Origin: Selaginella moellendorffii
Taxonomy: Eukaryota > Plantae > Lycopodiophyta
Direction of reading: 5' to 3'
Length of the DNA: 64,000 nucleotides
Assembly (NCBI RefSeq): GCF_000143415.4
Contig: NW_003314289.1
Span: 1,668,293-1,732,292, forward strand
Part shown: positions 636 to 20,628 of the stretch, in pieces
Layout of the letters: every line of letters starts with the position of its first letter
Numbering within the stretch: position 1 is the first letter of the stretch
Notes under the pieces: model-generated
What the model saw: only the letters and a program-made list of their open reading frames with translations
Database searches by the model: none
What the model was told of the DNA's origin: nothing
Made by a program: the position numbers and the translations under genes

Positions 636-1964
636 AGGGTGGAAGCCCAAAGCGTTCGTCTCCCAGACCCTGGGGGGTTTGGTGAGATCCAAAAGTATAG
701 TAGGGGGAGGACTCCAGTAGAGCTAGTTGGCTATAAAAGGCTAGTGTGACCAAAAAAAGGTATACTTACGTATTGGGTGATAATATAATTACAAAGTTAG
801 AGTGAATATAGATAAACAAGTGGGGTAGCTTAAAGAATTGGCTTTAACTCCCCTCAAAGATCAAATGGTTAATGCTTCCAATCTAAGTATGGGTGGCACT
901 ACCTACTTAGATACCTAATGTGGCTCATCAGAACCTCTCTTTAGCCATATGGCTAAGGCATCTAAAGGCAAAAGGTGACGAGGCTTGTGTAAAGCCATGG
1001 TTAAATATAAAAGGAAATGGCTTATGAACAAAAGTTTTTTTTTTTCAATTGGTTAAGGGTGTTAAGATACTTAGGGTTAAGTGTTTACCTCTCAAGAAGT
1101 CCAAATTTAGAAACTTACATTTACATATGTATCTTTCCACTACTTTCATAGTATTGGAGCTAATTGACTCCTTGATCTTGGCATGGTGCTTGTTGGTAGG
1201 AGGTAGAGCATAAAGTCAATGGGAGATTGAGAAATTTCAACAACTTATATTAATAATTAAGTCACTATTGCATAATAGTTCTTTACAGGAATTTCTAACA
1301 ATTGGAAAGGATACTTATGGATATTCAAGTGTTTGAGGGAGTCTAGCAATTCATTATGCTTATAGCAAGATTTAAACTTTAGTAATGAACAAAAGTGTGT
1401 GCAAAGAAGGCCAAGACAAAAAACTATGTTTTAGGTAGTTTTTCATATACTTTTCTCGTCATTTCTCCATAGATTAGTTAAATATGATTTATTCTTAGAT
1501 TCAAGTTTGGATGAGTTGTTGGTTATAGTTATGAGTGGAAGTGTTAAAGATAGAAATGATGAGGCATATAGTTATGTCCATGTGGCAGTAACTTTCTTTC
1601 AAAGCTTATATTTACTTTATGATGGTGTTTAATTTTTATTGGTAATGGTTTGTTTCTTTAATTAGTGTTTTTTCCTCTGCCTTACTGTTCTGCTATCATA
1701 AGCATGATTTGATGTTTTCTTATAGACATGAAGCATGATGTTTTTTATGCTAAGGTTAGCAAATAAATAATGGACTATAACATTCCAGGCTCCTTAGAGA
1801 TCACAAGCACCAGGCCGTTTATCTTAAGTTTCTCTTTTTTGCAGGCAGAAAGTTTCTCCAATGTACTTGATCTTCCCTTCTTGGACGAGCTCACCCATCA
1901 ATAAAGCCAATGCTTCAAAATCAAAACACAAAAATTTCTGCTGGTTTTGATCTTGAAACATTGG

Positions 1965-2025
1965 CTTTGTTGATGGGTGAGCTTGTCCAAGAAGGGAAGA
2001 TCAATTACATTGGACTCTCAGAAGG
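1965..2025 (+). pseudogene. Aldo-keto reductase fragment (second copy at about 10855-10915)
   Basis: Translates MGELVQEGKINYIGLSE, matching the plant AKR motif (L)VEEGKIKYIGLSE; no flanking AKR sequence recognised. Confidence 0.55.
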
Positions 2026-2410
2026 GGTGTTGTTCATGGAGATGTTTCAATCAATAACATCTGTGTGTGAGACTGTGCAACAAGATCCCTACTTGAACTT
2101 TGACTTTGCAGTTGCTTGTCAAGTGACTTGTAGTGCAATAGTTTACAATTCAATCTGAAAGTGTTATAGTAAAACAAACTAAGCTATCTTGCAGAAGTGT
2201 CTGACTGCTTCAAAGATGTATGACCCTTTGATTTCCTGTCGAATTGAAGAAAGTTTCTATATACAAGGGAAGCATTTTAAGGATATTAAGTGTAAGTAAC
2301 CAAACGGAACAACTTGAGAGATGATTCATAAAGGTACATATATGTTGAGCAAAATAATAACAGCAAAATCACTTCAATAACTTATATAACATCTCCATTC
2401 TTCGGCAAGA

Positions 2411-2935
2411 CTACATCCTTTTCCATTGCAGCAGCTGGCTGTGAGTTTTCGTTGTCACCGGAAGTTTCAACAGGCTGGAGAGGCTTGAAATAGCGACTCC
2501 TCCAGTGCGCCGGCGTCTGGAGAACTTCTTTGCGTCTTCGTCACAAGCAGAGGCAGAGGGGTCTAGCCGGTCTTCCCCGTCCGTTACCAGCCAGATTACC
2601 TTACCTTTCTGTGAACGCTGATCAAATGCATCCTGTGAAGTCTGTATCACTCAACACCGCCTAGAAGGTGAAGTAAAGGGCATCCCGAATCCATTCCACC
2701 ATGACGATCGCATGCATGTCGAAGAACCAGATACCAGCTGCATCGGCATTTCCTTGATATCGTCTTCCGTTTCATCTTTGTAGTTTATCATGTACAAGAT
2801 ATGCACTGCAAGATTTCTAAAAAGACAGCTTTTCCCTCCGCCTTTGGGTCCTGTCAGCACTTGAACAGCATGAAGTATGATGTCTCGAAACACGCTACGC
2901 TCACAATAAACAAACTCTTGCGGTCTTCGAACCAC
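2411..2935 (-). pseudogene. Decayed P-loop NTPase-like fragment (second copy at about 11150-11600)
   Basis: LTGPKGGGKS (Walker A-like) followed by KVIWLVTD (Walker B-like) across broken ORFs. Confidence 0.4.
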
Positions 2936-2997
2936 AACTCTAAAGGTGTTTTAATGATATTTGTTTCAAAATTGCATGGGCCCTCATTTGGCACAAT

Positions 2998-4551
2998 TCA
3001 GCAGACGCTGACCTGCTTGTAGTGGCTGGGTCTACCGTCTGGATATCTCATCAGTGTCATTTTGTAGCCTTCACGCTTGAGAAGCAACTGTTGACTCAAC
3101 TCGAGTTGCTCACAAGCCATTTCTCCGGCATGCACACTTGAACCTCGGATGACTTTGGAGTGCAGCAGCATGAACTTGCCATCCGCCAGCTCCACCACCG
3201 CGTTGTGCCATGGCGTTGGGATGTGGAAGTTCTTCTCCTCGGAAGAACGCTGGGCTGCCAAAAGAGAGGAATGGATGATGTTGATACCATACTTGGGACC
3301 TCGATTTGGATGCGGATGGATGGAGATGCGCAGCTGCAACGGGAAGAGCCACTCCACCATGGCCGAGTATGCGCGGTTGCGGAGGATCATGAGAAAGGCA
3401 ACCTGGCTGCACAGCTTCTTCTTGGCCGACTTTGACGGGAGATTCTTGCAACTCTTGTGTTCGTACAAGTCCTCGAGCATGAACCTGGAGAAGCCACGAT
3501 AAAGATTGCGTGTCTCGGGGTCATCCTTGATCTCCTTGGTGACAGTTGACTCGTCACAGCCAAACAAGCACATGAGAGCTCGCCTGGCATTCTCTGCATT
3601 GGTGGTGAGCTCGGTAGCAACAGGATGCTCCACGGTGGTGTTGGATATGAGCTTCGCAATGCTGTTCTCGCTGTGGTTGTCCAGCAGAAACTCATCCAGG
3701 CGAAAGAAATTGACCAAGCCCGGATACAAGTTGTGTGCCATCTCCCAAAACATCTCGCCATAAGAATCCACAGCAGCGTCGTCCGAGCCGACGAGATCGG
3801 AGAAGACATGGCCATCCGAGACGACGTTGTAGTGCACGCCCGGAGCATACACGGCCTTGATGAGATCCGCAACAACTTTCATGGAATGGATGGCCAGCTC
3901 CTCGGCCTTGTCGGGGAACTTTCCCAGAGTCTTGTCGGGATTACACGACTTGACTGGAAATGCCGGCAAGATGAACTCGAGTGGGATATTTCTTGCGACG
4001 TGGTACCTCACCTTGTCCGCAAACCTCTGCTTGCCCCCACTTGTGAACCACTGGTCGTGCTTTGGAAAGTGGATGTAATTCCTCTCGATGATGTCCACAA
4101 TTTGGGAGGTGATATCGTCCACCTCTTGAGGTGTGTGCGAGCTGAAGGACTCCAGGAGGCAATCTCTGGTCATGACGCTATTGTCCAGCAGCAGAGAGGC
4201 CAGGTAGCTCATCTCGCTCTCCACTGTGCTCGCGGGATCCTGCATGAAGGCAACGCCCTCGAATCCGTTGCCAATATATCTCTCGTAGACAGTGGCTGTC
4301 CACTCCTGATCATTTGCTGCTCCAAGCATGGAAATCGTGTATCTGTTGATCTCTGGAGCAATAGACCGTGTGGCTTGCTTGGCCGCCTCTAAATCTTCTG
4401 CTGTGCTCGCAACCATGGAGGAAAACATGAAGTCACTACTCTGAGCGGTAGAAACTGGGACATATCTTGACGCAGACTGTGAGACGAATGCAACCTCGCC
4501 ATTCTCCCTGTGAATATACAAGAATGCAATCTTGTCCTTGGGATAAGCCAT
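2998..4551 (-). CDS. Isocyanide (isonitrile) synthase, DIT1/PvcA family, copy 1 (517 aa, intronless)
   Basis: Family motifs in order: LPAFPVKS, PDKAEELA, VSDGHVFSD, LYRGFSRFMLEDL, RNRAYS, LRISIHPH, GPKYGI, HIPTPWHN. Confidence 0.92.
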   Translation of the reverse strand: MAYPKDKIAFLYIHRENGEVAFVSQSASRYVPVSTAQSSDFMFSSMVASTAEDLEAAKQATRSIAPEINRYTISMLGAANDQEWTATVYERYIGNGFEGVAFMQDPASTVESEMSYLASLLLDNSVMTRDCLLESFSSHTPQEVDDITSQIVDIIERNYIHFPKHDQWFTSGGKQRFADKVRYHVARNIPLEFILPAFPVKSCNPDKTLGKFPDKAEELAIHSMKVVADLIKAVYAPGVHYNVVSDGHVFSDLVGSDDAAVDSYGEMFWEMAHNLYPGLVNFFRLDEFLLDNHSENSIAKLISNTTVEHPVATELTTNAENARRALMCLFGCDESTVTKEIKDDPETRNLYRGFSRFMLEDLYEHKSCKNLPSKSAKKKLCSQVAFLMILRNRAYSAMVEWLFPLQLRISIHPHPNRGPKYGINIIHSSLLAAQRSSEEKNFHIPTPWHNAVVELADGKFMLLHSKVIRGSSVHAGEMACEQLELSQQLLLKREGYKMTLMRYPDGRPSHYKQVSVC

Positions 4552-4630
4552 GACTCTGAGTTCGTCACTGAGAATTCAGGTCGAGCTAAATCGTCAAGTG
4601 CCAGTGGTGTGGATCTTAGGAGCCCGAGTC

Positions 4631-4730
4631 TTTTATACGGGAAAACCAAAGGTTCGTCTATCTTTGACTGACGTGATATTTGAAAACGTCTTGTCGAGGG
4701 AAGATTCCCTGTACTGTAAAGTCAAAGTCG
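4631..4730 (-). promoter_or_regulatory. Proximal promoter of ICS copy 1: TATA box, two TTGACT W-box cores and a TGACGTG motif
   Basis: TATAAAA on minus strand at 4631-4637; TTGACT at 4664-4669; AGTCAA at 4720-4725; TGACGTG at 4669-4675. Confidence 0.5.
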
Positions 4731-5494
4731 GCTCCTTCAATGCATGTTTTGTGATAAGCACACTGGATCTTGCGTATAGAGAATTGCAAAATGAATGTTC
4801 TTCGAAGCCAAGATTATTCTTCAAGCTAGAACTAGGTCTCTAGCAAGCGATCACAGTAAAAGCATTACCGTTTTGCTTGTATCATTTTTTGGGAATCATC
4901 CTCTTTCGCTATAAGCACGTGTAAAATAGTTTATGCTTGCCTTAAAAGACCATTAGAATCATGCAAAGTTTTGCAAACACATGGATCCAACGTGCTTATC
5001 GCAAAACCATTTGTTTCGAATAAGCAACAGGGATGTCCTGCGTGGGCCATCCCAATGCAATGGATAATTCAACGTTCATTCAGCCGAGTAAGTTGACCGT
5101 GACCCAGAACAATGGAAAGTTTTGTGTGCTTCAGACTCAAACTTGGTCTCAACCAAATGAGTAAAAGTTGTCAAACGTTAGCATTGACTTCCTAGTGTCC
5201 AAAAAGATTTTATTCTTCTACCATTCGTACCGTATTTTCCTTAGTGTAGGCCCAAGTAGATTCGATATCTCATCCGTAAGCTGTAGGATGTCTTAAGCCC
5301 TCTTGCTTTGCTAATAAATAAACAACTGGGCAACAACACTGTACATTTTGAAACTCTTAGATCTGTCCCCGGTTGGATTTTTCCAATACCAAAAAAAATC
5401 CTAGCATGTAAAAAAATTAAAATACAATAGTAAAATATAATATATCTTCCACTTGTTATCACATTGCCCTAGGGTTTTCTAGTGTTTCTTGGAA

Positions 5495-5650
5495 AATACA
5501 GAGCGAAGGAAGCTTCCACGCAGAGGTACGTGACTTTGTCCATTGGACACGTTTTTCAATTGAAACGCTTGTCAAAGATGGTCGACCCGTCTATATAGCT
5601 CAGCTCTAGGCATCAACAAATCAACGACTACCAGCTCAGTCAACAGCAGC
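5495..5650 (+). promoter_or_regulatory. Proximal promoter of ICS copy 2
   Basis: TATATA at 5592-5597 preceded by cttgtcaaagat; short motif blocks shared with the copy 3 upstream region. Confidence 0.5.
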
Positions 5651-5743
5651 AAGACTGTAACGTTTCTGCTTGCGATCTCATCTCTAAAGTTTCTTGCCAG
5701 AGCTCTGTATTCTCTAATTTACAAGCCTCCACTCCTGATTTCC

Positions 5744-7294
5744 ATGGCTTTTCCAAAGGACAAGATTGCGTTCTTGTATATCCACAAGGAGAATGGCGAG
5801 GTGGCATTCATTTCACAGTCTGCCAGGAGATATGTCCCCCAAGTTGCCACTCAGAAGAGCAGTAGTGACGAATTCATGTTTTCTTCCATGGTTGCGAGTA
5901 CAGCAGAAGATCTAGAGGCAGTCAAGCAAGCCACACGCTCCATTGCTCCAGAGATCAATAGATACACCATTTCCATGCTTGGAGCTGATTCATGCTCTTC
6001 GTGGGAAGCCACCGTCTACGAGAGATACATTGGGAATGGATTCGAGGGCGTGGTTTTCATCCAGGAGGAGGATAGCGAGAACATGAAGTATCTGGCCTCT
6101 CTGCTGCTGGACAACAGCGTCATGACCAGAGATTGCCTTCTGGAGCCCTTCAGCTCGCACACACCTCAAGAGGTGGACGACATCACCTCGCAAGTTGTGG
6201 ACATCATTGAGAAGAATTACATCCACTTCCCAAAGCACGACCAGTGGTTCACCAGCGGGGGCAAGCAGAGGTTCGCAGACAGGGTGAGGTACCACGTCGC
6301 AAGAAATATCCCACTCGAGTTCATCTTGCCGGCATTTCCAGTCAAGTCGTGCAATCCCGACAAGACTCTGGGAAAGAGCCCTGACAAGGCCGAGGAGCTT
6401 GCCATTCATTCCATGAAGATTGTGGCTGATCTCATCAAAGCTGTGTACGCTCCAGGGGTGCACTACAACGTTGTTTCGGATGGCCATGTCTTCTCCGATC
6501 TCGTCGGCTCGGATGATGCTGCTGTGGATTCTTATGGCGAGATGTTTTGGGAGATGGCACACAACTTGTATCCGGGCTTGGTCAATTTCTTTCGCCTGGA
6601 TGAGTTTCTGCTGGACAACCACAGTGAGGACAGCATCGCGAAGCTTATTTCTAACACCGATGTGGACCACCCCGTTGCGACCGAGCTCACCACACATGCA
6701 GAGAATGCCAGGCGAGCTCTCATGTGCTTGTTTGGCTGTGACGAGTCAACAGTCACCAAGGAGATCAAGGAGGACCCGGAGACACGCAATCTTTATCGTG
6801 GCTTCTCCAGGTTCATGCTCGAGGACTTGTACGAACACAAAAGCTGCAAGAATCTCCCGTCAAAGTCGGCAAAGAAAAAGTTGTGCAGCCAAGTTGCCTT
6901 TCTCATGATCCTCCGCAACCGCGCATACTCGGCCATGGTGGAGTGGCTCTTCCCGTTGCAGCTCCGCATCTCTATCCACCCGCATCCAAATCGAGGTCCA
7001 AAATATGGCATCAACATCATCCACTCCTCTCTTGTGGCAGCCCAGCGTTCTTCCGAGGAGAAGAACTTCCACATCCCAACACCATGGCACAATACGGTGG
7101 TGGAGCTGGCGGATGGCAAGTTCATGCTGCTGCACTCCAAAGTCATCCGAGGTTCGAGTATGCATACCGGAGAAATGGCCTGTGAGCAACTCGAGTTGAG
7201 TCAACAATTGCTTCTCAACCGTGAAGGCTACAGAATGACACTGATGAGATATCCAGACGGCAGACCCAGCCACTACAGGCAAGTCAGTGTCTAG
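5744..7294 (+). CDS. Isocyanide synthase, DIT1/PvcA family, copy 2 (516 aa, intronless)
   Basis: Same motif set as copy 1; uninterrupted ORF; oriented head-to-head with copy 1. Confidence 0.92.
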   Translation: MAFPKDKIAFLYIHKENGEVAFISQSARRYVPQVATQKSSSDEFMFSSMVASTAEDLEAVKQATRSIAPEINRYTISMLGADSCSSWEATVYERYIGNGFEGVVFIQEEDSENMKYLASLLLDNSVMTRDCLLEPFSSHTPQEVDDITSQVVDIIEKNYIHFPKHDQWFTSGGKQRFADRVRYHVARNIPLEFILPAFPVKSCNPDKTLGKSPDKAEELAIHSMKIVADLIKAVYAPGVHYNVVSDGHVFSDLVGSDDAAVDSYGEMFWEMAHNLYPGLVNFFRLDEFLLDNHSEDSIAKLISNTDVDHPVATELTTHAENARRALMCLFGCDESTVTKEIKEDPETRNLYRGFSRFMLEDLYEHKSCKNLPSKSAKKKLCSQVAFLMILRNRAYSAMVEWLFPLQLRISIHPHPNRGPKYGINIIHSSLVAAQRSSEEKNFHIPTPWHNTVVELADGKFMLLHSKVIRGSSMHTGEMACEQLELSQQLLLNREGYRMTLMRYPDGRPSHYRQVSV

Positions 7295-7389
7295 AATTGC
7301 TCGGATTATATTCGTTTTAGGTCAAAAATCAAATTTGAAATAAGTGAATACCATATTTTATTTTTCCATGTCTTGAATTAGAGTTCTAG

Positions 7390-9200
7390 ATGGTTTTTCC
7401 AATGGGAAATGGTGCTGTGAGCGACGACACCGCGGCTAAGGTCACAAGACAGGTGGATTGGGGCGAAGCTCTTCGACTGCCAGAAGAAGTGCAGGGCTTT
7501 CTACTTGGAAGGTCAAGTTTCACTTCCTGTAGCTGGCGACTGTCTATCTCAAGATGCCCATTATGCTACTCTTCCAGATTGGTCAGTCGGATTATTCCCA
7601 CCGTGCTCAACTTAAAGAGCAGCTCGAGAAGGCTGAAAGTATAGGCCGCCATTGCGTTATCGTCTCCGGTGCCTATGGATGCGGGTTTTCTGTGTAAGTA
7701 GCTGCAAATACTTCATAATGACTTGCATGAGATAGATTTTATTTCGTTGTCGCTGGTAACGGTGGGTCTTGAGATCTCGAACACTTACTCACCTTGGTGA
7801 AGACCGAAAGCTTTTTGTTTTGTGCTCCATACCTGGAGCTGTCAAGGCACCGAAGGAAAGCCTTGAAGAGTTCGCCTTACCATCGTCCGGGTGCTTATGA
7901 CGTTGCTACTGGCCTGCAGAATGAAGAATTACCTCTACTGCAAGAGCAAGGGGACTATGTCGCGGCAGTGGCTGCCATGCAAAGGTCTAGTACAGGGAGA
8001 GGACGTTCCTCTACTGCCTTTTACGAGGTTTTCAGGAGCGTGGTGATGAAGTTCTGATGTGGGCTCTCAGTTGGAGCCTGTCCTACGCTAACTCGCCTTG
8101 GTACCAATACCAACTATTGCTCTTGAAGGCGATGCTCAACGAGGGCTACAAGTATTGGTCGACGTCAAGGGGTGGCTACGTGCTTCTTGCACACTGCCTG
8201 GAAGATCCCTGCAGAGTGGATGCAAGTCGAAAGCATGTAGTCCTACTCTCAGGCACAGGGTACGTATTGGACTTCGAGCTTATGGCAGATACCGACTTTA
8301 TGAACTTTGGCATCTGGAAGAGCGCCTCAGACATGGTAAGCTATGCTGGACAGGCTATAGAACTAACAGAAGACGAGGAAGCGGACTTGTGGAGCATGGA
8401 TAAAGTCTTTTGAGGAAAGTTTCAGCCACCGGCATCTGTTTTGGAAATCATGATCTTTAAGGACGTGAGCCTGCGCTTATGTCGCTGTGGGGAGTTAAGT
8501 CAGCCAATGAAGATATTCACGTTCTATGATGGGGTTTCCATGTTGGGGGAGACGGAAGGCATTGCCGATGGAGGAAATCTCATTGAGGAACTCAAGACGG
8601 TTGTAGCGCAATACTTCTGTGCTGGAGAGGGCTGCGTTTTCAGGGGCAACAAGGCTGCATTGTCTGAGGCTGGCCTGGGATGGACAGCTGCGTGGTTTAG
8701 TGTTCACCTGTGTAAGTACCTGACTCTTGCTGCACCCAGGAGCTACTTTCAATATCAATACCAGGCAAAGGGATTTTTGCGGAGTTCCTACCTGCAATCA
8801 AAGTGGTTGCGGTTGTCAACTGTTGTGCCTTTCCCGTCTGGCCCGGGTTTGTGCCTGAAGAACTTGGTAGCTCTATCACTCGAGAACATGTGGGTTAAAT
8901 ACGGGGGAAAGATGGAGACATGCCACTTATCAGACCGCTGCTGAAGGCTAACGGCTGCCCTCAAGCGTTTGAAGAGGAAGGGTCGAGTCATGAAAGGCTG
9001 GATGGATGCATTCGTTTGTTTTAATGTCGACGACTTAGAAGTCTTTCTTGCGGATGAAGCAATCTGCACAACATGGATCTCAGGAGAAAACACTACAGTG
9101 CAAGGCATCCGATCTGAAAGGATGTGAGGCATATTTTGGAGCAGTATGAGTTTGTTACAAAGCCACTGGCTCGACTGAGCTTGTGAAGACCGGTTCTGAC
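7390..9200 (+). pseudogene. Fragmented coding-like sequence of unknown family
   Basis: Coding-like GC content with several short consecutive + strand ORFs (7794, 8057, 8441); no recognisable domain. Confidence 0.3.
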
Positions 9201-10137
9201 GTAAGATTTCTACTTAAGGGATTTTAACTTAAACCTATCATACATAAGCACTGATTTTGCTCGTTGCCGATGCTCATGGAAGATTAACTGGGTCATTTTT
9301 TGATTAGCTTGAAAATTAATTCTAGAGACCCTATAAAAGCAAAGTGTTCAAACTATCAAAAGCTTGCCACCAAAAAAAAGAATAGATGGCAAGAAAGACC
9401 AAAGAAAAACAGATTTGTATAAATTGAATTTTGTAAATGCTAGAGTGTATTTCTGCCACCATTATCCATAATGAGATTTGAATCTTAAGCCTAAACTCAA
9501 GACTTATTATACAAAAGATGGACCCATATTATGATTAAATTTCTAAATTAGTTTAAGCTTGGACTAAATTAATTTCTAAAAACACTATAAAAATAGAGTT
9601 TCTAGGAAACACATTCTTCTTTTCCTTTGTCCATTTTCAATACTTTTTATCATGTGTTCTTCTTTTTACAACGATGATAGTTTCAACACTCTCTGATTGA
9701 TGGCTTTTCCTATCAAGCATTGGAGTAATCAAACACAGCTATTTACTTATAATTTTAATTGTCGGTAAAAGTGGATTCTACAAAAATATTAATCAAATAT
9801 CAAAATAATGAAGAAAAAATGAGTTTGTATTAAATAGTCTAAGTACAAAATTATCAAAAACTTAATTTTATAGCTCTAAAAGTAATATAATCCAACCCTC
9901 AAAAACTTAGGTTAATAGTAATCTTAAATGCCCATCATAAATCTTGAGCCCATTACCAAAGGGCTAGGGTTACTTGGTCATATAATCTTGAATAAATATA
10001 AAGAAATGGCAAATATATAACATTAGCAATTGATATGCCAATAAAGTTTTATGGTATATAGTATGAGTTCTATTGCTTCCTCAATTAATTAAAATTTTAG
10101 ATTGCTATACAACTTAGTCAATATTCCACTTCCAACA

Positions 10138-11687
10138 AGATTGAGAAATTTCAACAACCCACATAGGATTACATGCAGGAAATTTAGCAATTGGAAAGGA
10201 TGCTTATAGATATTGAAGTGTCTAAGGGAGTCTAGCAATTCATTATGCTTGTGGCAAGATTTAAACTATAGTAATGAACAAAAGTGTGTGCAAGGAAGGC
10301 TAAGACAAAAAACTAAGTTTTGGGTAGTTTTTCATATGCTTTTCTCATTTTCTCAACTCATAATCTTAGATTAGTTAAACATGATTTAGGCTTAGATTCA
10401 AGATGAGCTGCTGGTTATGGTTATGAGTGGAAGTGTTAAAGGTAGAAATGTGGTAGTAACTTTCTTTCAAAGCTTATATCTTCTTATGATGGTGTTTATT
10501 TTTCTTGCTAATGGTTTGTTTCTTTAATTATCTGCCTTACTGTTCTGCTGTCTCTACAAGGATGTGCATGATTTGATGTTTTCACTCATTTCTGTCTTTC
10601 TTATAGACATGAAGCACGATGTTTTTTATGCTAAGGTTAGCAAACAAATAATGGACAGCAATGACTACAACATTCCAAGCTCCTTAGAGATCACAAGCAC
10701 TAGGCCGTTTATCTTAAGTTTCTCTTTTTTGCAGGCAGAAAGTTTCTCCAATGTACTTGATCTTCCCTTCTTGGGCGAGCTCACCTATCAATAAAGCCAA
10801 TGCTTCAAGATCAAAACACGAAAATTTCTGCCGGTTTTGATCTTGAACCATTGGCTTTGTTGATGGGTGAGCCCGTCCAAGAAGGGGAGATCAATTACAT
10901 TGGACTCTCAGAAGGGGTGTTGTTCCGTGTGTGAGACTGTGCAACAAGATCCCTACTTGAACTTTGACTTTGCAGTTGCTTGTCAAGTGACTTGGAGTGC
11001 AATAGTTTACGATTCAATTTGAAAGTGCTATAGTAAAACAAACTAAGCTATCTTGCAGAAGTGTCTGACTGTTTCAAAGATGTACGACCCTTTGATTTCC
11101 CTGTAACCGTCGGATTGAAGAAAGTTTCTATATATAAGGGAGGAGAGGCTTGAAATAGCAACTCCTCCAGTGCGCTGGAGAACTTCTTTGCGTCTTCGTT
11201 ACAAGCAGAGCCAGAGGGGTCTTCCCCGTCCGTTACCAGCCAGATTACCTTACCTTTCTGTGAACGCTGATCAAATGCATCCTGTGAAGTCCATATCACT
11301 CAACACCTCGTCACTCGCTTAGAAGGCGAAATAAAGGGCATCCCGAATCTGTTCCGCCATGACGATCGCATGCATGTTGAAGATCCAGATACCAGCCGCG
11401 TCAGCATTTCCTTGACGTCGTCTTCCGTTTCATCTTCCTAGTTTATCATGTACAAGATATGCACTGCAAGATTTCTAAGAAGACAGCTTTTCCCTCCGCC
11501 TTTGGGTCCTGTCAGCACTTGAAGAGCATGAAGTATGATGTCTTGAAACACGCTACGCTCACAATAAACAAACTCTTGTGGCCTTCGAACCGCAACTTGA
11601 GAGACCTGGAAATGGCAAAATCATCTTCTCCTCCAAGCCCTAAAAGTGTTTTATTTCAAAATTGCATGGGCCCGCATTTGGCACAAT
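10138..11687. repeat. Segmental duplication, copy B (3' flank of ICS copy 3)
   Basis: Direct repeat of 1224-2997 with small indels. Confidence 0.9.
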
Positions 11688-13241
11688 TCAGCAGACGCTG
11701 ACCTGCTTGTAGTGGCTGGGTCTACCGTCTGGATATCTCATCAGTGTCATTTTGTAGCCTTCACGCTTGAGAAGCAACTGTTGACTCAACTCGAGTTGCT
11801 CACAAGCCATTTCTCCGGCATGCACACTTGAACCTCGGATGACTTTGGAGTGCAGCAGCATGAACTTGCCATCCGCCAGCTCCACCACCGCGTTGTGCCA
11901 TGGCGTTGGGATGTGGAAGTTCTTCTCCTCGGAAGAACGCTGCGCTGCCACTAGAGAGGAATGGATGATTTTGATACCATACTTGGGGCCTCGATTTGGA
12001 TGCGGATGGATGGAGATGCGCAGCTGCAACGGGAAGAGCCACTCCACCATGGCCGAGTATGCACGGTTCCTGAGGATCATGAGGAAGGCAACCTGGCTGC
12101 ACAGCTTCTTCTTGGCCGACTTTGACGGGAGATTCTTACAACTCTTGTGTTCGTACAAGTCCTCGATCATGAACCTGGAGAAGCCACGATAAAGATTGCG
12201 TGTCTCCGGGTCCTCCTTGATCTCCTTGGTGACGGTTGACTCGTCACAGCCAAACAAGCACATGAGAGCTCGCCTGGCATTCTCTGCGTTCGCGGTGAGC
12301 TCAGTCGCAACGGGATGCTCCACGGTGGTGTTGGAGATAAGCTTTGCAATGTCTCTGTAACTGTGGTTGTCCAGCAGAAACTCATCCAGGCGAAAGAAAT
12401 TGACCAAGCCCGGATACAAGTTGTGTGCCATCTCCCAAAACATCTCGCCATATGAATCCACAGCAGCGTCGTCCGAGCCGACGAGATCGGAGAAGACATG
12501 GCCATCCGAGACGACGTTGTAGTGCACGCCTGGAGCATACACGGCCGTGATGAGATCCGCAACAATCTTCATGGAATGGATGGCCAGCTCCTCGGCCATG
12601 TCCGGGCACTTTCCCAGAGTCTTGTCGGGATTGCACGACTTGACTGGAAATGCCGGCAAGATGAACTCGAGTGGGATATTTCTTACGACGTGGTACCTCA
12701 CCCTGTCTGCGAACCTCTGCTTGCCCCCGCTGGTGAACCACTGGTCGTGCTTTGGGAAGTGGATGTAATTCTTCTCAATGATGTCCACAACTTGCGAGGT
12801 GATGTCGTCCACCTCTTGAGGTGTGTGCGAGCTGAAGGGCTCCAGAAGGCAATCTCTGGTCATGACGCTGTTGTCCAGCAGCAGAGAGGCCAGATACTTC
12901 ATGTTCTCGCTATCCTCCTCCTGGATGAAAACCACGCCCTCGAATCCATTCCCAATGTATCTCTCGTAGACGGTGGCTTCCCACGAAGAGCATGAATCGG
13001 CTCCAAGCATGGAAATCGTGTATCTGTTGATCTCTGGAGCAACGGAGCGTGTGGCTTGCTTGACTGCCTCTAGATCTTCTGCTGTACTCGCAACCATGGA
13101 AGAAAACATGAATTCGTCACTACTGCTCTTCTGAGTGGCAACTTGGGGGACATATCTCCTGGCAGACTGTGAGATGAAGGCAACCTCGCCATTCTCCTTG
13201 TGGATATACAAGAATGCAATCTTGTCCTTTGGAAAAGCCAT
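11688..13241 (-). CDS. Isocyanide synthase, DIT1/PvcA family, copy 3 (517 aa, intronless, chimeric)
   Basis: Same motifs; N-terminal part matches copy 2, C-terminal part and 3' flank match copy 1. Confidence 0.92.
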   Translation of the reverse strand: MAFPKDKIAFLYIHKENGEVAFISQSARRYVPQVATQKSSSDEFMFSSMVASTAEDLEAVKQATRSVAPEINRYTISMLGADSCSSWEATVYERYIGNGFEGVVFIQEEDSENMKYLASLLLDNSVMTRDCLLEPFSSHTPQEVDDITSQVVDIIEKNYIHFPKHDQWFTSGGKQRFADRVRYHVVRNIPLEFILPAFPVKSCNPDKTLGKCPDMAEELAIHSMKIVADLITAVYAPGVHYNVVSDGHVFSDLVGSDDAAVDSYGEMFWEMAHNLYPGLVNFFRLDEFLLDNHSYRDIAKLISNTTVEHPVATELTANAENARRALMCLFGCDESTVTKEIKEDPETRNLYRGFSRFMIEDLYEHKSCKNLPSKSAKKKLCSQVAFLMILRNRAYSAMVEWLFPLQLRISIHPHPNRGPKYGIKIIHSSLVAAQRSSEEKNFHIPTPWHNAVVELADGKFMLLHSKVIRGSSVHAGEMACEQLELSQQLLLKREGYKMTLMRYPDGRPSHYKQVSVC

Positions 13242-13299
13242 GGAAATCAGTGCAGAAGTTGCTAGATTGTGTGCGTAGAAACCACTGCTGCTGTGGATG

Positions 13300-13500
13300 A
13301 GCTAGCAGCTGTATGAATGATTTGTTGAAGCACTAGGGCTTTATATAAGGGGAGTATCTTTGACAAGAGTTTCTACATTTGAAATCGTGTTCAATTTAGA
13401 TTCCTCTTTGGAAGACAAAGTCACATCCTCTCCTTTTTCTATTGTTCCTGGGAAGCTTCGCATGTTTGATCATTCTTGATATTCCTTCGCTCTGTAGTTT
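13300..13500 (-). promoter_or_regulatory. Proximal promoter of ICS copy 3
   Basis: TTATATAA at 13341-13348; atctttgac at 13356-13364; motif blocks colinear with the copy 2 promoter. Confidence 0.5.
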
Positions 13501-13586
13501 TCTCGTCCTGAAACACATGACGCCAATAGAAGAAAATGTAAAGAATGCTAGAGTCTCTGTCTTACGGCTAAGTCGTGCCGCGTTTC

Positions 13587-16500
13587 TCAGTACTGGAACA
13601 GAACTTCAGCAGGGCTCGCCGCCTGAAGGACTCGAGAAAAGTCCAAGACTAGCTCTGGACAAGGACACTGTCGTCAGTCTTTTTGAAACTTCGCTCACCA
13701 ACAAAGCTGACCTTGAAACGCTCGTCTCAGGCGTGTTCGCATGACTGCTGCTACGAATTGCCGCTTGCTTGCTTCGTCCATGACTCCATGCCTTGCTGGT
13801 AGCTCTGAAGAGGTGACAAAGGCACGAAGTACAGGTTCCGTGCTGGCTGGGTGTTCCAGAGCTAGACTGTATAGGATGTCTGCTAAGGCGTCTCTGAAGA
13901 TCACGGTCAGTTGTCCGTAGGCCACGTACCTGACGACTGTCTGTAACGCTGTTAAGTGGCTTGAAAGTGAGTACCACTACAAATGTACCTCTACCAGTCT
14001 TGGTATGCTGGGGACGACAATTTCATTGACATATGGTTTAAGGTCCTGAGAAATCCGCCACGACTCCGTCTCGCTCAATCCTCCCAGAAAAATAGTACTC
14101 GTTATGAACTTGGCAGCATAAACTGCAGGCTCAGAATCACCTCTTTGCAAAACACCTGCCAGAGCTGAAGTCGTAAAAAAAGACACCCAGGAAACTTTAA
14201 AGCTTACCAATGGCACACCCGAAAAACTTTGCCAGCGACTTTGACGGAACAAAAACGAGAGGGATGTCCCGGAGGCAGCTGCTGCCGAGGCTACAAATCG
14301 CACCTAGCGATTCAAAGGCATTGTCTTTGCGCTGTCGAGATTCTTGCTGACTTAAAACCACCAGCTCCAGGAATTCAACGACATCACTGACTTCTTGTAG
14401 GCAGTTTGACAAACAGAAGTGTAGCTCATCGTGCATTGTCTTAGACGACGATACCAGGACAACAATCTGTAAAAATCCACCAATATAAGCTCGACGAAGA
14501 AAAAAACAACAAGAACTTACGCTGCACAAACATTGGATGCAAGAAGGAACGAGGTGCTGCTTAAACATGCCCGTGACAAGTCCCAGCACACGGGGAAGTA
14601 CATCCTCCATCATGACGCCCATTCGAGTAGCCAAAGCTCCCCACAAGTCGCACAAACTTCTAGCAACATCAATGCTTGTCGCCCAGTTTGTCGCTAGAAC
14701 ATCAAGACTACTCCAAATTTCTCGCAAAACTGGCACCGCAGGATGTGCGTCTGATTTTCTCCCAAAGTCCACAACAGCTTTTATCGTTCTCAAGGCACTT
14801 TCCAAAGGTTTGCCATACGCATCAGTAACCTGTAAATAAGCACACGTCATTTCAAGTCAAAACCATCTCCATGCTAGCAAAACTTACTTGCATCACTGAG
14901 CATTGTTTGATTGTAGCCACCGCCGAGGCTGTTAAGCCCTGGATAGTTGCTTCCGATTCATGGACTGGCAATGCAGCGGCAACGGCTGCAAGTCCTTCGA
15001 TCAGCATAACGCTCTCCTTGCTTTGCAGCCCTCCTAATGAAGTAGTGATTGCTGTTTCGCAAGCTCCCATCAGTGGAGACAGAGCACGCACAGCGGCTAA
15101 CTGCGATGCTGATGCTCGGCAAAGTTCACGTAAGGATTCAGCACCGGATGCCTTCGCTGTACACAAGTACAAACCAAAATAATAAGGAGAAAAGTTTAAC
15201 GAGATAAGGAATTTACCATCAGGAACAGCAAGAGCTGTAATGCTGTAGTTCACAGCTTTCTCAAGTGCTACAGGATCGGCAGCAATCCATTCTGAGAAGC
15301 TTTTGAGTAGCCTTGCAGCCGTATTGACAAGCTTCCCAGACGGCCATCTCGCACTGACTGTTAAGACAATGGTCAACAGAAAATTGGTAGCTAAAGCCAC
15401 GAATGCATACCTGATTCCAGAAGATTGTGTCCTCCAAAAGCCCCGGAAAACAAGCTCCTCAAAAGTTCTACGGCAGCCTTTTGAGTGTCAACAGCGGAAG
15501 TAATCTGTTCTCGTAGACAAGAAACTGCATACAGATAGAATTCCGCGTGTTGCCAACAAGAGGCTTGCAGTAAATTGTCAGAAATATACACTATAAGGTC
15601 GCACCTTAGCACCTTGAAACAGGAAGCAATAGCCTCCTCAGCTATGCCATAGCGAAATCTATATCGAAGTACAAAAGTTAGTATCTGCAACAAAAACTGA
15701 CAGCTTTTACCCGCAAAAATCATCGTCGTCTATGTCAAAATCGTCGGAGGGATGCTTTGCAACCTTTGCAAGTGCCTGTAAAAGCACAAAGACTTACTTG
15801 TCATGCTCATGGTTAAGATAATTGATAACCAGACCTCAAAGATAGCCAGGAATATCTTCTCTCGAGGAACATTTACCGAGGAGATGGTGGCGAAACGGGG
15901 CCACGCCACTGCCACCATTGCCGCTCCATCAATACCAAGACCACCGCCGCCGCCGGTTGCATCGATCATCCAGTCGATCAAGAGTAAATCTTCCGGACCT
16001 CCTTTACAAATCAATGCGGGCTCGGAAGCCCCCAGAGCAGCAAGAACGCAGCACAAAGCATGCGAGCGTCGTTGGGAGGAGCTGTTGAAGTACCTTTTGT
16101 AGCTGAGAAGAGCTGCAAATCTGAGTTAAACCAAAACCAATAAACAGGTAATCCTCACCGGAAATAACTGCTCGCACTGCAGCATCCCTGCCTGGAAGGC
16201 AATCGACAGCTGAAATAAGCTCGGACAGCGCTGCAGACGACGCAATCACACAGGACTCGTTATCGGATCCCAGGGAAGCCAGCAGCACATTGAAGATTTT
16301 CGGATAATCCGAGTACGTTTCAGACAAAGTGCCACCACCTTGCAACCTGGAACATCTTAAAAATCAGCTCAGAATGGAGCTTGTTACATACCATCTCTCG
16401 AAGCACGTTAGCGTTTTCTCCAGAAGTGGGACGCTAGTTACATTTTGAAGAAAGCCCAGAACTCGCGGGTAGGATAACTGGATGCATTGCATAACCTGAC

Positions 16501-17139
16501 AGAGAACCTGCATTAGCTCAAGAGATACAAAGAAAAAGAGAAGAGGAGAACTTACTTCCCACGCAAGAGCTCGAGACCTGTGTAGCGTTTCTTCCGCGAG
16601 CGCGATCAACAGTTCTAGCGCCAGAGACACCGCTACCTCGTTTGTCATGTCTGTTTTCTCGATTACATCTGCCACCAGCTAGAAGATCAATCGAAAGATT
16701 AAAACTGGAAGAAAGAACGAAGAAGAAAGAAAGAACGAACCTGGGAGCACGCCTCTCCTCCAGCAACAGCAGCAGCAGCGCTCAAAACGACGCACACCCG
16801 GCTCGCCACGATTCTATCTCCTACATTTTTAGGCAATTGCCAGAGAAGAAGATCGAAAATCTCGTGCGCGTCAATCTCATCCAGCTGGACCCAGTCCGAT
16901 CGCAGCTTGGACAGCAGCAGATTGAGCACGAAGAACTTCACCTCCGCTGATCGTCCCAGCGCGGAGCCATCGGGAGGGAAGGCGAGATACAAGGCCACAG
17001 TCCACATTTGCGGCCTGGAAACGAAGGCGCTCACCCATTGATTTGCCTCCTGCTGCTGCTGCGCGTCCCTGGCATCGAGAGCCGCGGCAATGGCGGCCTC
17101 GAGCATTCCTGCATTCTTGGCGAGCTCCTCCTCCTCCAT
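13587..17139 (-). CDS. Importin-beta family HEAT-repeat protein (importin-13/transportin-SR-like), multi-exon
   Basis: N-terminus MEEEEL...QQQEANQWVSAF...W..AL...EVKFF..NLL.SKLRSDW is IBN_N-like; LELLIALAEE and WQHAEFYLYAV segments; inferred last exon ELVLDFSRVLQAASPAEVLFQY* ends at 13587. Confidence 0.75.
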
Positions 17140-17215: not shown

Positions 17216-18406
17216 ATGGTAAGTGATGGAATGCGTGCGATGTGGCTCTCTGATCGATCACTGCGCAGGCGGATCCGGCTTCCGTGGCGCAAATCATCGA
17301 TGGGAAGGCAATCGCGAAGGCGATTCATCAAGAGATCGCGGAAGAAGTCGCTCAGCTCAAGGAACAGCACGGCAAGGTAGAACACAGGGCATTTTCTTTC
17401 GTTTTGTAATGTGTTTGTTTCCTTGGTTTGCTCAAGGTCCCTGGATTGGCTGTTGTTATAGTGGGCGAGCGAAAGGATTCGCAGACTTATGTGAGAATGA
17501 AGAGGAAGGCCTGTGCTGAGGTTGGAATTAATTCCATCAATGTGGATCTTCCGGAGAACATCTCTCAGGAAGAGCTCCTGGATCAAGTTCTAGAGCTAAA
17601 CGAGAATCCTGACGTCCATGGTATGTGTTTTCTTTCATAGTTTTCGTGTTGCTCACAAGTTTTAATCGGCAGGGATTCTCGTCCAGCTTCCACTTCCCAA
17701 GCACATCAACGAGGAAGCCATCCTCAACGCCGTAGGCCTCGACAAGGACGTCGATGGCTTCCATCCTTTAAACATTGGAAAGCTTTGCATGAAAGGAAGA
17801 GAGCCATCGTCCATTCCATGCACTCCCAAGGTATGATCATAGAATAATAATGGTGAGTTTCTCATCTCTTGGGACTCGCAGGGGTGCATCGAGCTTCTCA
17901 AGAGGAGCAAAATCCCGATTGAGAAGAAGAAAGCTGTTGTTGTTGGTCGTAGCAACATCGTTGGAATGCCTGCTGCGTTGCTCTTGATGAAGAACGACGC
18001 TACCGTCACTGTGGTTCACTCGAGAACACCCGAACCGCAAGATATTGTAAAGGAGGCTGACATCGTTATTGCAGCTGCTGGCCAGCCACAAATGGTACTT
18101 CGTTTGCTCGCAATCTTTGTTCTTTTCTCTAACTTGGTAGATTTTTTCTTTTTCTTTTCTTTTTTCCAGATTAAAAGAGACTGGATAAAACCCGGTGCTG
18201 CGGTTATCGATGTTGGGACAAATGCCGTGAGTGATCCATCGAAGAAACTCGGCTATAGAATTGTCGGTGATGTGGATTTTGAGGAAGTGAAAACTGTTGC
18301 TGGCTGGATTAGTCCGGTTCCAGGAGGTGTTGGTCCCATGACCATAGCAATGCTGCTACGTAACACCGTCGACTGTGCGAAGGCAGCCTTTGCAAGTGGT
18401 GCCTGA
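17216..18406 (+). CDS. folD: Bifunctional methylenetetrahydrofolate dehydrogenase/cyclohydrolase (FolD), no transit peptide, multi-exon
   Basis: ATG at 17216 followed directly by GTAAGT intron; exons give [57 protein letters not shown]. Confidence 0.93.

Positions 18407-19213: not shown

Positions 19214-20628
<1,415 letters not shown>

What the first reader, a model, noticed from the sequence alone, without database searches (positions are those of the whole stretch)
2998..13241. Three intact isocyanide-synthase (DIT1/PvcA) genes in a plant genome: candidate plant isonitrile/N-formyl amino acid pathway
Seen: three full-length, intronless 516-517 aa ORFs with the complete DIT1/PvcA motif series (LPAFPxKS, PDxxEE, SDGHVFSD, YRGFSRF, RNxAYS, RISIH, GPKxGI, TPWH), directly adjoining intron-containing plant genes. 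Established: this family (PvcA, IsnA, XanB, Dit1) condenses an amino acid with ribulose-5-phosphate to form an isocyanide in bacteria and fungi; products include metal-binding antimicrobials and the yeast spore-wall formyl-dityrosine precursor. I know of no characterised plant member. Inference: retention of three intact copies amid decayed neighbours implies selection for a defence, metal-handling or spore-wall chemistry new to plants.
Basis: partly seen in the sequence, partly recalled or inferred. Interest (0 to 1): 0.95.

Follow-up and report, generated by a model that had tools for sequence, protein, structure and literature searches.

The report
Fungal-type isocyanide synthase genes in Selaginella
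This stretch of the spikemoss Selaginella moellendorffii holds three intact, selectively maintained but weakly transcribed copies of a fungal Dit1-type isocyanide synthase gene. They belong to a catalogued but unstudied plant gene family, so this plant may make isocyanide or N-formyl-tyrosine compounds.

Summary
Three uninterrupted ORFs encode 517, 516 and 517 aa: 2998-4551(-), 5744-7294(+) and 11688-13241(-). Each matches Pfam DIT1_PvcA at about 1e-83, keeps 49 of 50 family-wide conserved residues, and models onto solved PvcA and PIsnA. The window is S. moellendorffii scaffold GL377593.1, with ordinary plant genes alongside (PPR, TBL, GH3, an exportin-like gene).

Pairwise dN/dS is 0.11-0.25. 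Copy 3 is a gene-conversion mosaic of the other two.

Origin:
- All Selaginella copies form one clade (100/100) inside the fungal Dit1-type clade, and chytrids are the nearest group (90/65).
- An AU test does not reject a position outside all fungi.
- Two older paralogues keep one short intron at exactly the codon and phase of an intron in four chytrid genes and in Aspergillus. The ancestor was therefore an intron-bearing fungal-type gene, and the window copies lost the intron later.

No Dit2-type P450 lies in the window or beside four other copies, so a yeast-style dityrosine pathway is unsupported. Transcription evidence here is weak.

The family is already annotated in RefSeq and listed in Lim et al. 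2018 ("one species of moss"), and this scan has reported it repeatedly on other DNA of the same genome. The enzyme's product in the plant is untested.

The parts
2998..4551 (-). Copy 1 (c1): intact intronless Dit1-type isocyanide synthase ORF, 517 aa
   Evidence: ORF. PF05141 E 4.1e-83. 49 of 50 family-conserved residues. A few RNA reads and short contigs lie on it. The older public gene model is a 589-aa spliced variant, so this exact ORF product is not in the protein collection.
5744..7294 (+). Copy 2 (c2): intact intronless Dit1-type isocyanide synthase ORF, 516 aa, head-to-head with c1
   Evidence: ORF. PF05141 E 3e-83. The exact protein is encoded on GL377593.1. AF2 model pLDDT 86, pTM 0.88. 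Foldseek matches PvcA 3e59 and PIsnA 9dh4/9dhm at E ~1e-22, target-normalised TM-score (TMt) 0.83-0.88.
11688..13241 (-). Copy 3 (c3): intact intronless ORF, 517 aa; a mosaic whose first ~600 nt are c2-like and whose remainder plus 3' flank are c1-like
   Evidence: ORF. PF05141 E 5.8e-82. In nt 1-600, informative sites favour c2 over c1 by 71 to 5. From nt 1400 on, they favour c1 over c2 by 104 to 5. The public model is a 5'-truncated 391-aa protein.
4552..5743 (.). 1.2-kb divergent intergenic region between c1 and c2 (the two promoters)
   Evidence: Similarity between copies stops at or within 9 nt of the ATG. Upstream sequences are unrelated to each other, and TATA-like boxes lie ~85-100 nt upstream of c1 and c3. 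No reads or contigs were laid here.
1286..2997 (-). 3' flank of c1, duplicated with the 3' flank of c3
   Evidence: blastn self-comparison: 1286-2270 matches 10176-11141 (83%) and 2477-4552 matches 11142-13242 (90%).
10176..11687 (-). 3' flank of c3, the direct-repeat partner of the c1 flank
13470..17139 (-). Context: neighbouring multi-exon plant gene (948 aa, faint exportin/Xpo1 hit) ending 229 nt from the c3 start codon
   Evidence: Gene call on GL377593.1 mapped to window coordinates; a chain of minus-strand ORFs.

Best explanation
The three ORFs are genuine, resident genes of Selaginella moellendorffii for Dit1-type isocyanide synthases (ICS, PF05141).

Origin (inferred). The family descends from an intron-bearing fungal-type gene. 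It most likely arrived by one old DNA-level transfer from an early-diverging, chytrid-like fungus. The crown group that includes these copies then lost the last inherited intron. That group was amplified by tandem and inverted duplication, and gene conversion keeps reshuffling it. Purifying selection holds it in place.

Mechanism (inferred from homology). Each enzyme binds an aromatic L-amino acid, most likely L-tyrosine. It condenses the alpha-amino group with the C2 carbonyl of ribulose-5-phosphate and fragments the adduct, leaving an isocyano group on the amino acid. That group may then hydrate to N-formyl-tyrosine, as proposed for yeast Dit1.

Shown here: gene integrity, family membership, fold, selection, mosaicism, plant genomic context, fungal-type phylogenetic position and the shared intron position.

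Inferred: the transfer scenario, the substrate, the product and any role in defence, metal handling or the spore wall.
For: Identity and integrity:
- PF05141 at 276-280 bits.
- 49 of 50 columns conserved in at least 90% of 56 fungal and bacterial ICS rows are kept. The single departure (V256S) is shared by most Selaginella copies.
- The AF2 model (pLDDT 86) superposes on PvcA and on PIsnA bound to L-Tyr or to an isonitrile product, TMt 0.83-0.88, E ~1e-22. The sequence hit to these entries is E 1e-25 to 1e-29.

Selection: Nei-Gojobori dN/dS is 0.146, 0.247 and 0.106 for the three pairs, and 0.06-0.20 in the catalytic domain.

Residency:
- The window is N-free and lies in the 1.97-Mb scaffold GL377593.1.
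- PPR, TBL, GH3, THF-dehydrogenase and OYE-like genes are nearby.
- GC3 of 0.66-0.69 falls within the neighbours' range of 0.46-0.86.
- Paralogues sit on at least seven other scaffolds.

Origin:
- In a 69-row LG+C20 tree, Selaginella is monophyletic (100/100), eukaryotic rows separate from bacterial rows (100/100), and chytrids are sister (90/65).
- The N-terminal ~130 aa is homologous to the chytrid N-terminus (hhalign E 2.7e-6) but shows no detectable homology to the Dikarya N-terminus.
- The motifs M-x-FPKD and PDGRPSHY are shared with chytrids only.
- Paralogues P0005 and P0006 carry a 57-nt and a 55-nt GT-AG intron, phase 1, after SDGHVFSDL. Four chytrid genes and an Aspergillus gene have an intron at exactly that position.

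Gene conversion.

Transcription: short contigs from three runs fall only inside the coding regions, and 7 raw RNA reads lie on c1.
Against: - No enzyme assay or metabolite exists for any plant member.
- Expression evidence for these copies is thin. Only 7 reads came from about 9 million read records of one RNA run, none at 99% or more. The contigs are 40-640 nt and could come from near-identical paralogues or the other haplotype.
- A chytrid donor is not proven. The best tree with all fungi held as one clade and Selaginella outside is only 1.0 lnL worse (AU p 0.217).
- The shared intron is pan-fungal (also in Aspergillus), so it points to a fungal-type eukaryotic source and not specifically to chytrids.
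- No orthologue from another Selaginella or other plant appeared among the listed hits, so the age of the transfer is not bracketed.
- Basiony et al. 2020 (PMC7345447) argue that yeast Dit1 is not a true isocyanide synthase, so the chemistry of this clade is itself unsettled.
Confidence: 0.8

Rival explanations
1. The genes are real and resident but were inherited vertically from an ancient eukaryotic ICS gene. All other sampled plants lost it, so no fungus-to-plant transfer occurred.
For: The AU test does not reject Selaginella lying outside a monophyletic fungal group (delta lnL 1.0, p 0.217). The shared intron position fits common eukaryotic descent as well as DNA transfer.
Against: - No other plant appears among the 120 best of 409 hits. 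Everything between 98% and 49% identity is S. moellendorffii, and the next hits are chytrids at 43-45%.
- Lim et al. 2018 found the family in a single plant species.
- Vertical descent would need losses in every other sampled plant and algal lineage.
- N- and C-terminal motifs and the N-terminal domain profile link Selaginella specifically to chytrids.
Confidence: 0.08
2. The copies are fungal contamination or a misassembly, not plant DNA.
For: The closest non-Selaginella relatives are fungal.
Against: - The 64-kb window has no N and lies in a 1.97-Mb scaffold with typical plant genes on the same contiguous sequence.
- A 98% identical copy sits on a second scaffold of 2.09 Mb, and further paralogues sit on at least six others.
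- No fungus is more than about 45% identical.
- GC3 is host-like.
- The copies have been reshaped by local duplication and gene conversion together with their flanks.
Confidence: 0.02
3. The genes are intact but functionally idle, or have a non-ICS role: recent duplicates kept open by gene conversion and making no isocyanide or formamide product in the plant.
For: Read support is very low in the one raw RNA run laid, and the contigs are only fragmentary. Gene conversion between copies is demonstrable and can delay decay. Some other family members are degenerate, with 15-38 of the 50 conserved residues lost in the P0007, P0009, P0014 and P0043 models.
Against: - dN/dS is well below 1 at dS 0.2-0.34 between copies, with far more synonymous than non-synonymous change per site.
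- 49 of 50 catalytic-domain conserved residues are retained in all three copies and in paralogues down to 73% identity.
- The promoters are independent and non-homologous, with TATA-like boxes.
Confidence: 0.1

Closest known systems
Chytrid Dit1-type ICS homologues (Powellomyces hirtus, Phlyctochytrium arcticum, Geranomyces variabilis, Cladochytrium tenue, Blyttiomyces helicus)
   Same: - Highest identity of any non-Selaginella hit (34-45%, up to 99% query cover).
- Sister group in the tree (90/65).
- Homologous N-terminal ~130-aa domain (hhalign E 2.7e-6).
- Shared terminal motifs.
- An intron at the same codon and phase as in Selaginella paralogues P0005 and P0006.
   Different: - The chytrid genes keep 2-4 introns in the Dit1 part of the gene; the window copies have none.
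- In three Spizellomycetales the gene sits beside an OPT transporter, and in two of them also an AMP-binding enzyme and a beta-lactamase-fold gene.
- In Cladochytrium it is fused to an MFS transporter and lies next to a P450.
- None of these partners accompanies the plant copies.
- Selaginella proteins carry a ~20-aa insertion near residue 475-497.
Saccharomyces cerevisiae Dit1 and the Ascomycota dit1/dit2 cluster (Nickles et al. 2023; Basiony et al. 2020)
   Same: Same Pfam family and same overall Dit1-type clade relative to bacterial ICS. Similar length (about 520-540 aa), with an N-terminal extension ahead of the catalytic domain. L-tyrosine is the presumed substrate.
   Different: - About 31-43% identity.
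- The Ascomycota clade is separate (100/100).
- The N-terminal domain is not detectably homologous.
- The defining divergent dit2 P450 partner, seen beside the Aspergillus homologue, is absent from the window and from four other Selaginella loci.
- A spore-wall role is untested in the plant.
Bacterial PvcA / PIsnA (PDB 3E59, 9DH4, 9DHM) tyrosine isonitrile synthases
   Same: Same catalytic fold (TMt 0.83-0.88, E ~1e-22). Same conserved motif set.
   Different: - Bacterial enzymes are about 310-330 aa and lack the N-terminal domain.
- Identity is about 24-34%.
- They work in operons with a TauD-type Fe/2OG dioxygenase (PvcB/IsnB), which is not seen beside the plant genes.
- They lie on the other side of a 100/100 branch.

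Membership tests
DIT1_PvcA isocyanide synthase family (PF05141) | Pfam model matched above the gathering score over the whole domain | tested here: met
   276-280 bits against a cut-off of 26.4; profile positions 1-266/268 of 273, for all three copies.
DIT1_PvcA isocyanide synthase family (PF05141) | Family-wide invariant residues and motifs retained | tested here: met
   49 of 50 columns that are at least 90% conserved in 46 fungal/unnamed plus 10 bacterial rows are kept in c1, c2 and c3. The only change is V256S.
DIT1_PvcA isocyanide synthase family (PF05141) | Catalytic fold of solved isonitrile synthases | tested here: met
   AF2 model pLDDT 86, pTM 0.88. Foldseek matches 3e59, 9dh4 and 9dhm at E 1.5e-22 to 1e-20, TMt 0.83-0.88.
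DIT1_PvcA isocyanide synthase family (PF05141) | Catalysis: amino acid plus ribulose-5-phosphate gives an isonitrile (or N-formyl amino acid) | not testable with these tools
   Needs recombinant enzyme and product detection.
Fungal Dit1-type subfamily | Phylogenetic placement with fungal Dit1-type proteins and not with bacterial ICS | tested here: met
   Eukaryotic rows against bacterial rows 100/100, and Selaginella sister to chytrids 90/65. A position just outside all fungi is not rejected (AU p 0.217).
Fungal Dit1-type subfamily | N-terminal ~130-aa extension ahead of the catalytic domain | tested here: met
   The extension is present. It is homologous to the chytrid N-terminus (hhalign prob 88%, E 2.7e-6). 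Homology to the Dikarya N-terminus is not detectable (E 0.021).
Fungal Dit1-type subfamily | Conserved spliceosomal intron positions of the fungal genes | tested here: inconclusive
   The window copies have no introns. Paralogues P0005 and P0006 share the phase-1 intron after SDGHVFSDL with four chytrids and Aspergillus. The feature is therefore met for the family but not for these three genes.
dit1/dit2 dityrosine cluster (Ascomycota; Nickles et al. 2023) | Co-located Dit2-type cytochrome P450 | tested here: not met
   - No P450 among 40 window ORFs of at least 100 aa scanned with Pfam.
- No heme-binding signature in any of the six frames of the 64 kb.
- No P450 within 10 kb of four other Selaginella copies.
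- A P450 is adjacent in Aspergillus and in Cladochytrium.
dit1/dit2 dityrosine cluster (Ascomycota; Nickles et al. 2023) | Product N,N'-bisformyl dityrosine in a spore wall | not testable with these tools
   No chemistry or tissue-resolved expression was available here.
Bacterial pvc/isn-type ICS operon | Adjacent TauD-type Fe(II)/2OG dioxygenase (PvcB/IsnB) | tested here: not met
   None was seen in the window. Only plant-type 2OG-FeII_Oxy genes lie 4-9 kb from one paralogue.

The most novel reading that the evidence does not exclude
Selaginella moellendorffii runs a plant isocyanide (or N-formyl-tyrosine) pathway on a captured fungal enzyme. The enzyme has been freed from its fungal partners (P450, OPT or MFS transporter) and amplified to about twenty copies. 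The amplified intronless crown group supplies a defence or metal-binding metabolite of a class that I do not know from land plants.
Probability: 0.4. Interest if true: 0.75.

Novelty: new member of a known kind. Interest (0 to 1): 0.55.

Why it matters
Isocyanide natural products and their Dit1/PvcA-type synthases are known from bacteria and fungi. To my knowledge no land-plant isocyanide pathway has been described, and none appeared in the papers searched.

A lycophyte that has kept, amplified and selectively maintained about twenty copies of a fungal-type synthase is a concrete place to look for such chemistry. It is also a clear case for studying how a gene of fungal type becomes a plant gene family: intron retention then loss, new promoters, tandem amplification and gene conversion.

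The shared intron position gives evidence on origin that does not depend on the tree. It argues against a bacterial or cDNA-mediated origin.

The value is tempered by three points. The family is already annotated and was listed in a 2018 survey. Expression is low. Nothing here shows what the enzymes make.

Tried and rejected
- Decayed DIT1 copies in the window: tblastn found only the three intact genes.
- Literature on these genes: 'Selaginella' plus DIT1 returned only papers on a dicarboxylate transporter of the same name. Searches for SELMODRAFT ids, 'Selaginella' plus 'pyoverdine', PIsnA, and plant isocyanide reviews gave nothing usable.
- Recurrent partner gene: the no-Pfam genes lying head-to-head with paralogues P0006 and P0005 are unrelated to each other.
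- P450 partner: none found.
- Rfam: no RNA family in the window.
- N-terminal domain fold: the best matches are PAS/LOV, and also roadblock/longin folds, at Z up to 8.1. Foldseek E is 3e-3 or worse. This is within the range the tool calls common for unmatched models, so it is only a lead.
- Chytrid donor: the AU test could not exclude Selaginella outside all fungi, so I do not claim a chytrid donor as shown.
- Reads: one read-laying run at 97% likeness on 2001-8000 gave too little to prove copy-specific transcription, or to link the genes physically to their neighbours.
- Not done: orthologue search in other Selaginella genomes (no tool covers plant genomes), dN/dS by codon-model likelihood, and substrate-pocket comparison (no coordinates at hand).

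Full report
**1. Observation**

The window holds three uninterrupted ORFs at 2998-4551(-), 5744-7294(+) and 11688-13241(-), of 517, 516 and 517 aa. I call them c1, c2 and c3. Each matches Pfam PF05141 (DIT1_PvcA) over residues 181-470 at E 3e-83 to 6e-82. c2 and c3 are 96% identical in protein, and c1 is 91% identical to both. tblastn finds no further DIT1-like fragment in the 64 kb, so the 'decayed neighbours' are not decayed synthase copies.

**2. Where it is**

The exact c2 protein is encoded on Selaginella moellendorffii scaffold GL377593.1 (1.97 Mb, GCA_000143415.2). Window position 5744 equals record position 1674036. RefSeq names these proteins 'spore wall maturation protein DIT1'.

The window has no N and carries ordinary plant genes:
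- a 948-aa multi-exon exportin-like gene ending 229 nt from the c3 start codon, followed by a THF dehydrogenase/cyclohydrolase gene;
- an OYE-like oxidoreductase exon;
- a 912-aa PPR gene, a TBL/PC-esterase gene and an alpha/beta hydrolase;
- a two-exon GH3 gene, a FAF1/UBX gene and Ty3-type retrotransposon fragments.

GC3 of the synthase genes (0.66-0.69) lies inside the range of these neighbours (0.46-0.86). Contamination is therefore very unlikely, although I did not obtain long reads across the junctions.

**3. Local history**

c1 and c3 are direct repeats that include about 1.7 kb of 3' flank. c2 is inverted and shares only the coding sequence. In all pairs the similarity stops at, or within 9 nt of, the ATG, and the three upstream regions are unrelated.

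c3 is a mosaic. In the first 600 nt, 71 informative sites group it with c2 and 5 with c1. From about nt 600 onward, and through the 3' flank, it groups with c1. dS shows the same pattern: c2-c3 is 0.065 in the N-terminal part, and c1-c3 is 0 in the C-terminal part. This is gene conversion or unequal recombination among neighbours.

**4. Selection and integrity**

Nei-Gojobori dN/dS is 0.146 (c1-c2), 0.247 (c1-c3) and 0.106 (c2-c3), at dS 0.20-0.34. The catalytic domain is more constrained, at 0.06-0.20.

Fifty alignment columns are at least 90% conserved across 46 fungal or unnamed and 10 bacterial relatives. All three copies keep 49 of them. The exception (V256S) is shared by most Selaginella copies.

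An AlphaFold2 model of c2 (pLDDT 86, pTM 0.88) superposes on PvcA (3E59). It also superposes on PIsnA bound to L-tyrosine (9DH4) or to an isonitrile product (9DHM), at E about 1e-22 and target-normalised TM-score (TMt) 0.83-0.88. The sequence hit to these entries is E 1e-25 to 1e-29.

**5. Expression**

One read-laying run covered 2001-8000 at 97% likeness or more.
- The raw RNA run had about 12% of its records read. It gave 7 reads, all on c1 and none at 99% or more.
- Logan contigs of three small runs gave 40-640-nt pieces inside the c1 and c2 coding regions only.
- Nothing lay in the intergenic stretches, and no joints were seen.

This fits weak transcription of intronless messages. The pieces could also come from near-identical paralogues or the other haplotype, so I rate expression of these particular copies as weakly supported.

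**6. Origin**

The best non-Selaginella hits are chytrid fungi at 34-45% identity, some covering 99% of the query. Dikarya follow at 30-43%. No other plant is listed.

I built a 69-row tree with 13 Selaginella, 9 chytrid, 20 Dikarya, 17 unnamed and 10 bacterial rows. It used 477 columns under LG+C20+F+G4 with ultrafast bootstrap and SH-aLRT (the bacterial rows come).
- Selaginella is one clade (100/100).
- The eukaryotic Dit1-type proteins are separate from bacteria (100/100).
- Ascomycota are separate (100/100).
- Chytrids are sister to Selaginella (90/65).

The AU test does not reject the alternative in which all fungi form one clade and Selaginella lies outside it (delta lnL 1.0, p 0.217). 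The tree alone does not name a donor.

Two further lines of evidence bear on the origin.

First, the N-terminal ~130 aa, which bacterial enzymes lack, is homologous between Selaginella and chytrids (hhalign probability 88%, E 2.7e-6, 119 columns). It shows no detectable homology between Selaginella and Dikarya, or between chytrids and Dikarya. The terminal motifs M-x-FPKD and PDGRPSHY are shared by Selaginella and chytrids only.

Second, intron positions.
- The more divergent paralogues P0006 (73% identical to c2) and P0005 (80%) each contain one canonical GT-AG intron, of 55 and 57 nt. It is in phase 1, directly after SDGHVFSDL.
- Exact spliced reconstruction shows an intron at the same codon and phase in Powellomyces, Phlyctochytrium, Geranomyces and Cladochytrium, and in an Aspergillus homologue.
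- Two other intron positions are shared among chytrids and Madurella.

The Selaginella family therefore descends from an intron-bearing fungal-type eukaryotic gene. This excludes a bacterial source and a cDNA-mediated entry for the family as a whole.

In the tree, P0006 and P0005 branch below the crown group that contains c1-c3 and P0001-P0004 (supports 83/88 and 83/93). The simplest reading is a single intron loss before the amplification that produced the window's copies.

**7. Partners**

The yeast and Ascomycota dit cluster is defined by dit1 plus a divergent dit2 P450 (Nickles et al. 2023). I see that P450 beside the Aspergillus homologue and beside the Cladochytrium DIT1-MFS fusion gene.

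In the plant, no partner of this kind was found:
- none of 40 window ORFs of at least 100 aa is a P450 or a TauD-type dioxygenase;
- no heme-binding signature occurs in any frame;
- no P450 lies within 10 kb of four other family members.

Those loci do show a BAHD acyltransferase near two copies and two plant-type 2OG oxygenases near one. These are common plant families, and no partner recurs. The plant genes look like stand-alone synthases, so a yeast-style bisformyl-dityrosine pathway has no support here.

**8. Mechanism**

By homology, the enzyme should bind an aromatic L-amino acid and convert its amino group to an isocyano group, using C2 of ribulose-5-phosphate. L-tyrosine is most likely, because Dit1, PvcA, XanB and the PIsnA-tyrosine complex all point that way. 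Hydration would then give N-formyl-tyrosine.

Whether Dit1-clade enzymes release an isocyanide or a formamide is itself disputed (Basiony et al. 2020; Nickles et al. 2023). None of this is tested for the plant proteins.

**9. What is already known**

Lim et al. 2018 state that ICS proteins occur in 'one species of moss'. Their Table S1 lists 23 S. moellendorffii gene ids with PF05141. Most of these are 5'-truncated ~391-aa models that miss the N-terminal domain.

This scan has reported the family repeatedly on other DNA of the same genome, and my results agree with those notes.
- the shared intron position and the inferred secondary intron loss;
- the chytrid-specific N-terminal homology;
- the explicit AU result;
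- the gene-conversion mosaic;
- the partner survey.

**10. Verdict**

This is a real feature, a new plant member of a known enzyme family. It is already catalogued but uncharacterised. It is interesting mainly as a lead to plant isocyanide chemistry and as a clean example of a fungal-type gene naturalised in a plant genome.

Noticed in passing
L082 6617-9468(-), L083 3691-6518(-) and 6918-8969(+), L084 6779-9555(-), 1961-3846(-), 4131-6606(+), 12356-18063(-): In three Spizellomycetales chytrids, the Dit1-type gene closest to the plant family lies next to an OPT oligopeptide/metal-chelate transporter gene. In two of them it also lies next to an AMP-binding enzyme and a beta-lactamase-fold gene. 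Geranomyces adds an 1870-aa NRPS-like gene. This looks like a conserved small ICS gene cluster without a P450.
   Followed up: partly
L091 899-2450(+) and 3001-6247(+): In Cladochytrium tenue the Dit1 homologue is fused to an MFS transporter (881 aa) and preceded by a P450 gene. This is a chytrid version of the yeast DIT2-DIT1-DTR1 trio.
   Followed up: no
window 5744-6148 (c2 residues 1-135) and the same parts of c1 and c3: The N-terminal extension folds in AF2 as two strands, helices, three strands and a long helix. Its best structural matches are LOV/PAS domains (Z up to 8.1), and also roadblock/longin folds. The scores are too weak to call, but a small-molecule-sensing or dimerisation domain ahead of the synthase is a lead.
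   Followed up: partly
L085 10743-10797 and L086 10761-10817: Paralogues P0006 and P0005 keep a 55-nt and a 57-nt intron at a position shared with fungal Dit1 genes. Reading through it gives a stop within about 20 codons, so the intron must be spliced for function.
   Followed up: yes
window 2392-2476: An 85-nt piece in the 3' flank of c1 lies within a ~200-nt stretch that is absent from the c3 repeat unit. It matches the interior of abundant 2-5-kb contigs in three runs, and those contigs continue with unrelated sequence on both sides. It is probably a captured fragment of a well-expressed gene located elsewhere.
   Followed up: no
window 2411-4551 and 11688-12863 (public gene models): The older GenBank models for c1 (589 aa, spliced past the stop codon) and c3 (391 aa, starting at an internal Met) differ from the simple intact 517-aa ORFs. 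The exact ORF products are absent from the protein collection.
   Followed up: partly
window 17216-18406(+) and 19214-20420(-): A THF dehydrogenase/cyclohydrolase gene and an OYE/OPR-like flavin oxidoreductase gene lie just beyond the exportin-like gene. One-carbon (formyl) metabolism next to a putative formamide-forming enzyme is probably coincidence, because the ICS carbon comes from ribulose-5-phosphate.
   Followed up: no
window 60152-61345(+): PPR repeats appear in two different reading frames. This is either an intron-split PPR gene or a decayed one.
   Followed up: no
L085 5858-7239, L087 6346-8027, L086 15331-16510 and 19821-20999: BAHD acyltransferase genes lie within 4 kb of two other Selaginella ICS copies. 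Two plant-type 2OG-Fe(II) oxygenase genes lie 4-9 kb from a third copy. They are possible tailoring enzymes, or chance neighbours.
   Followed up: no
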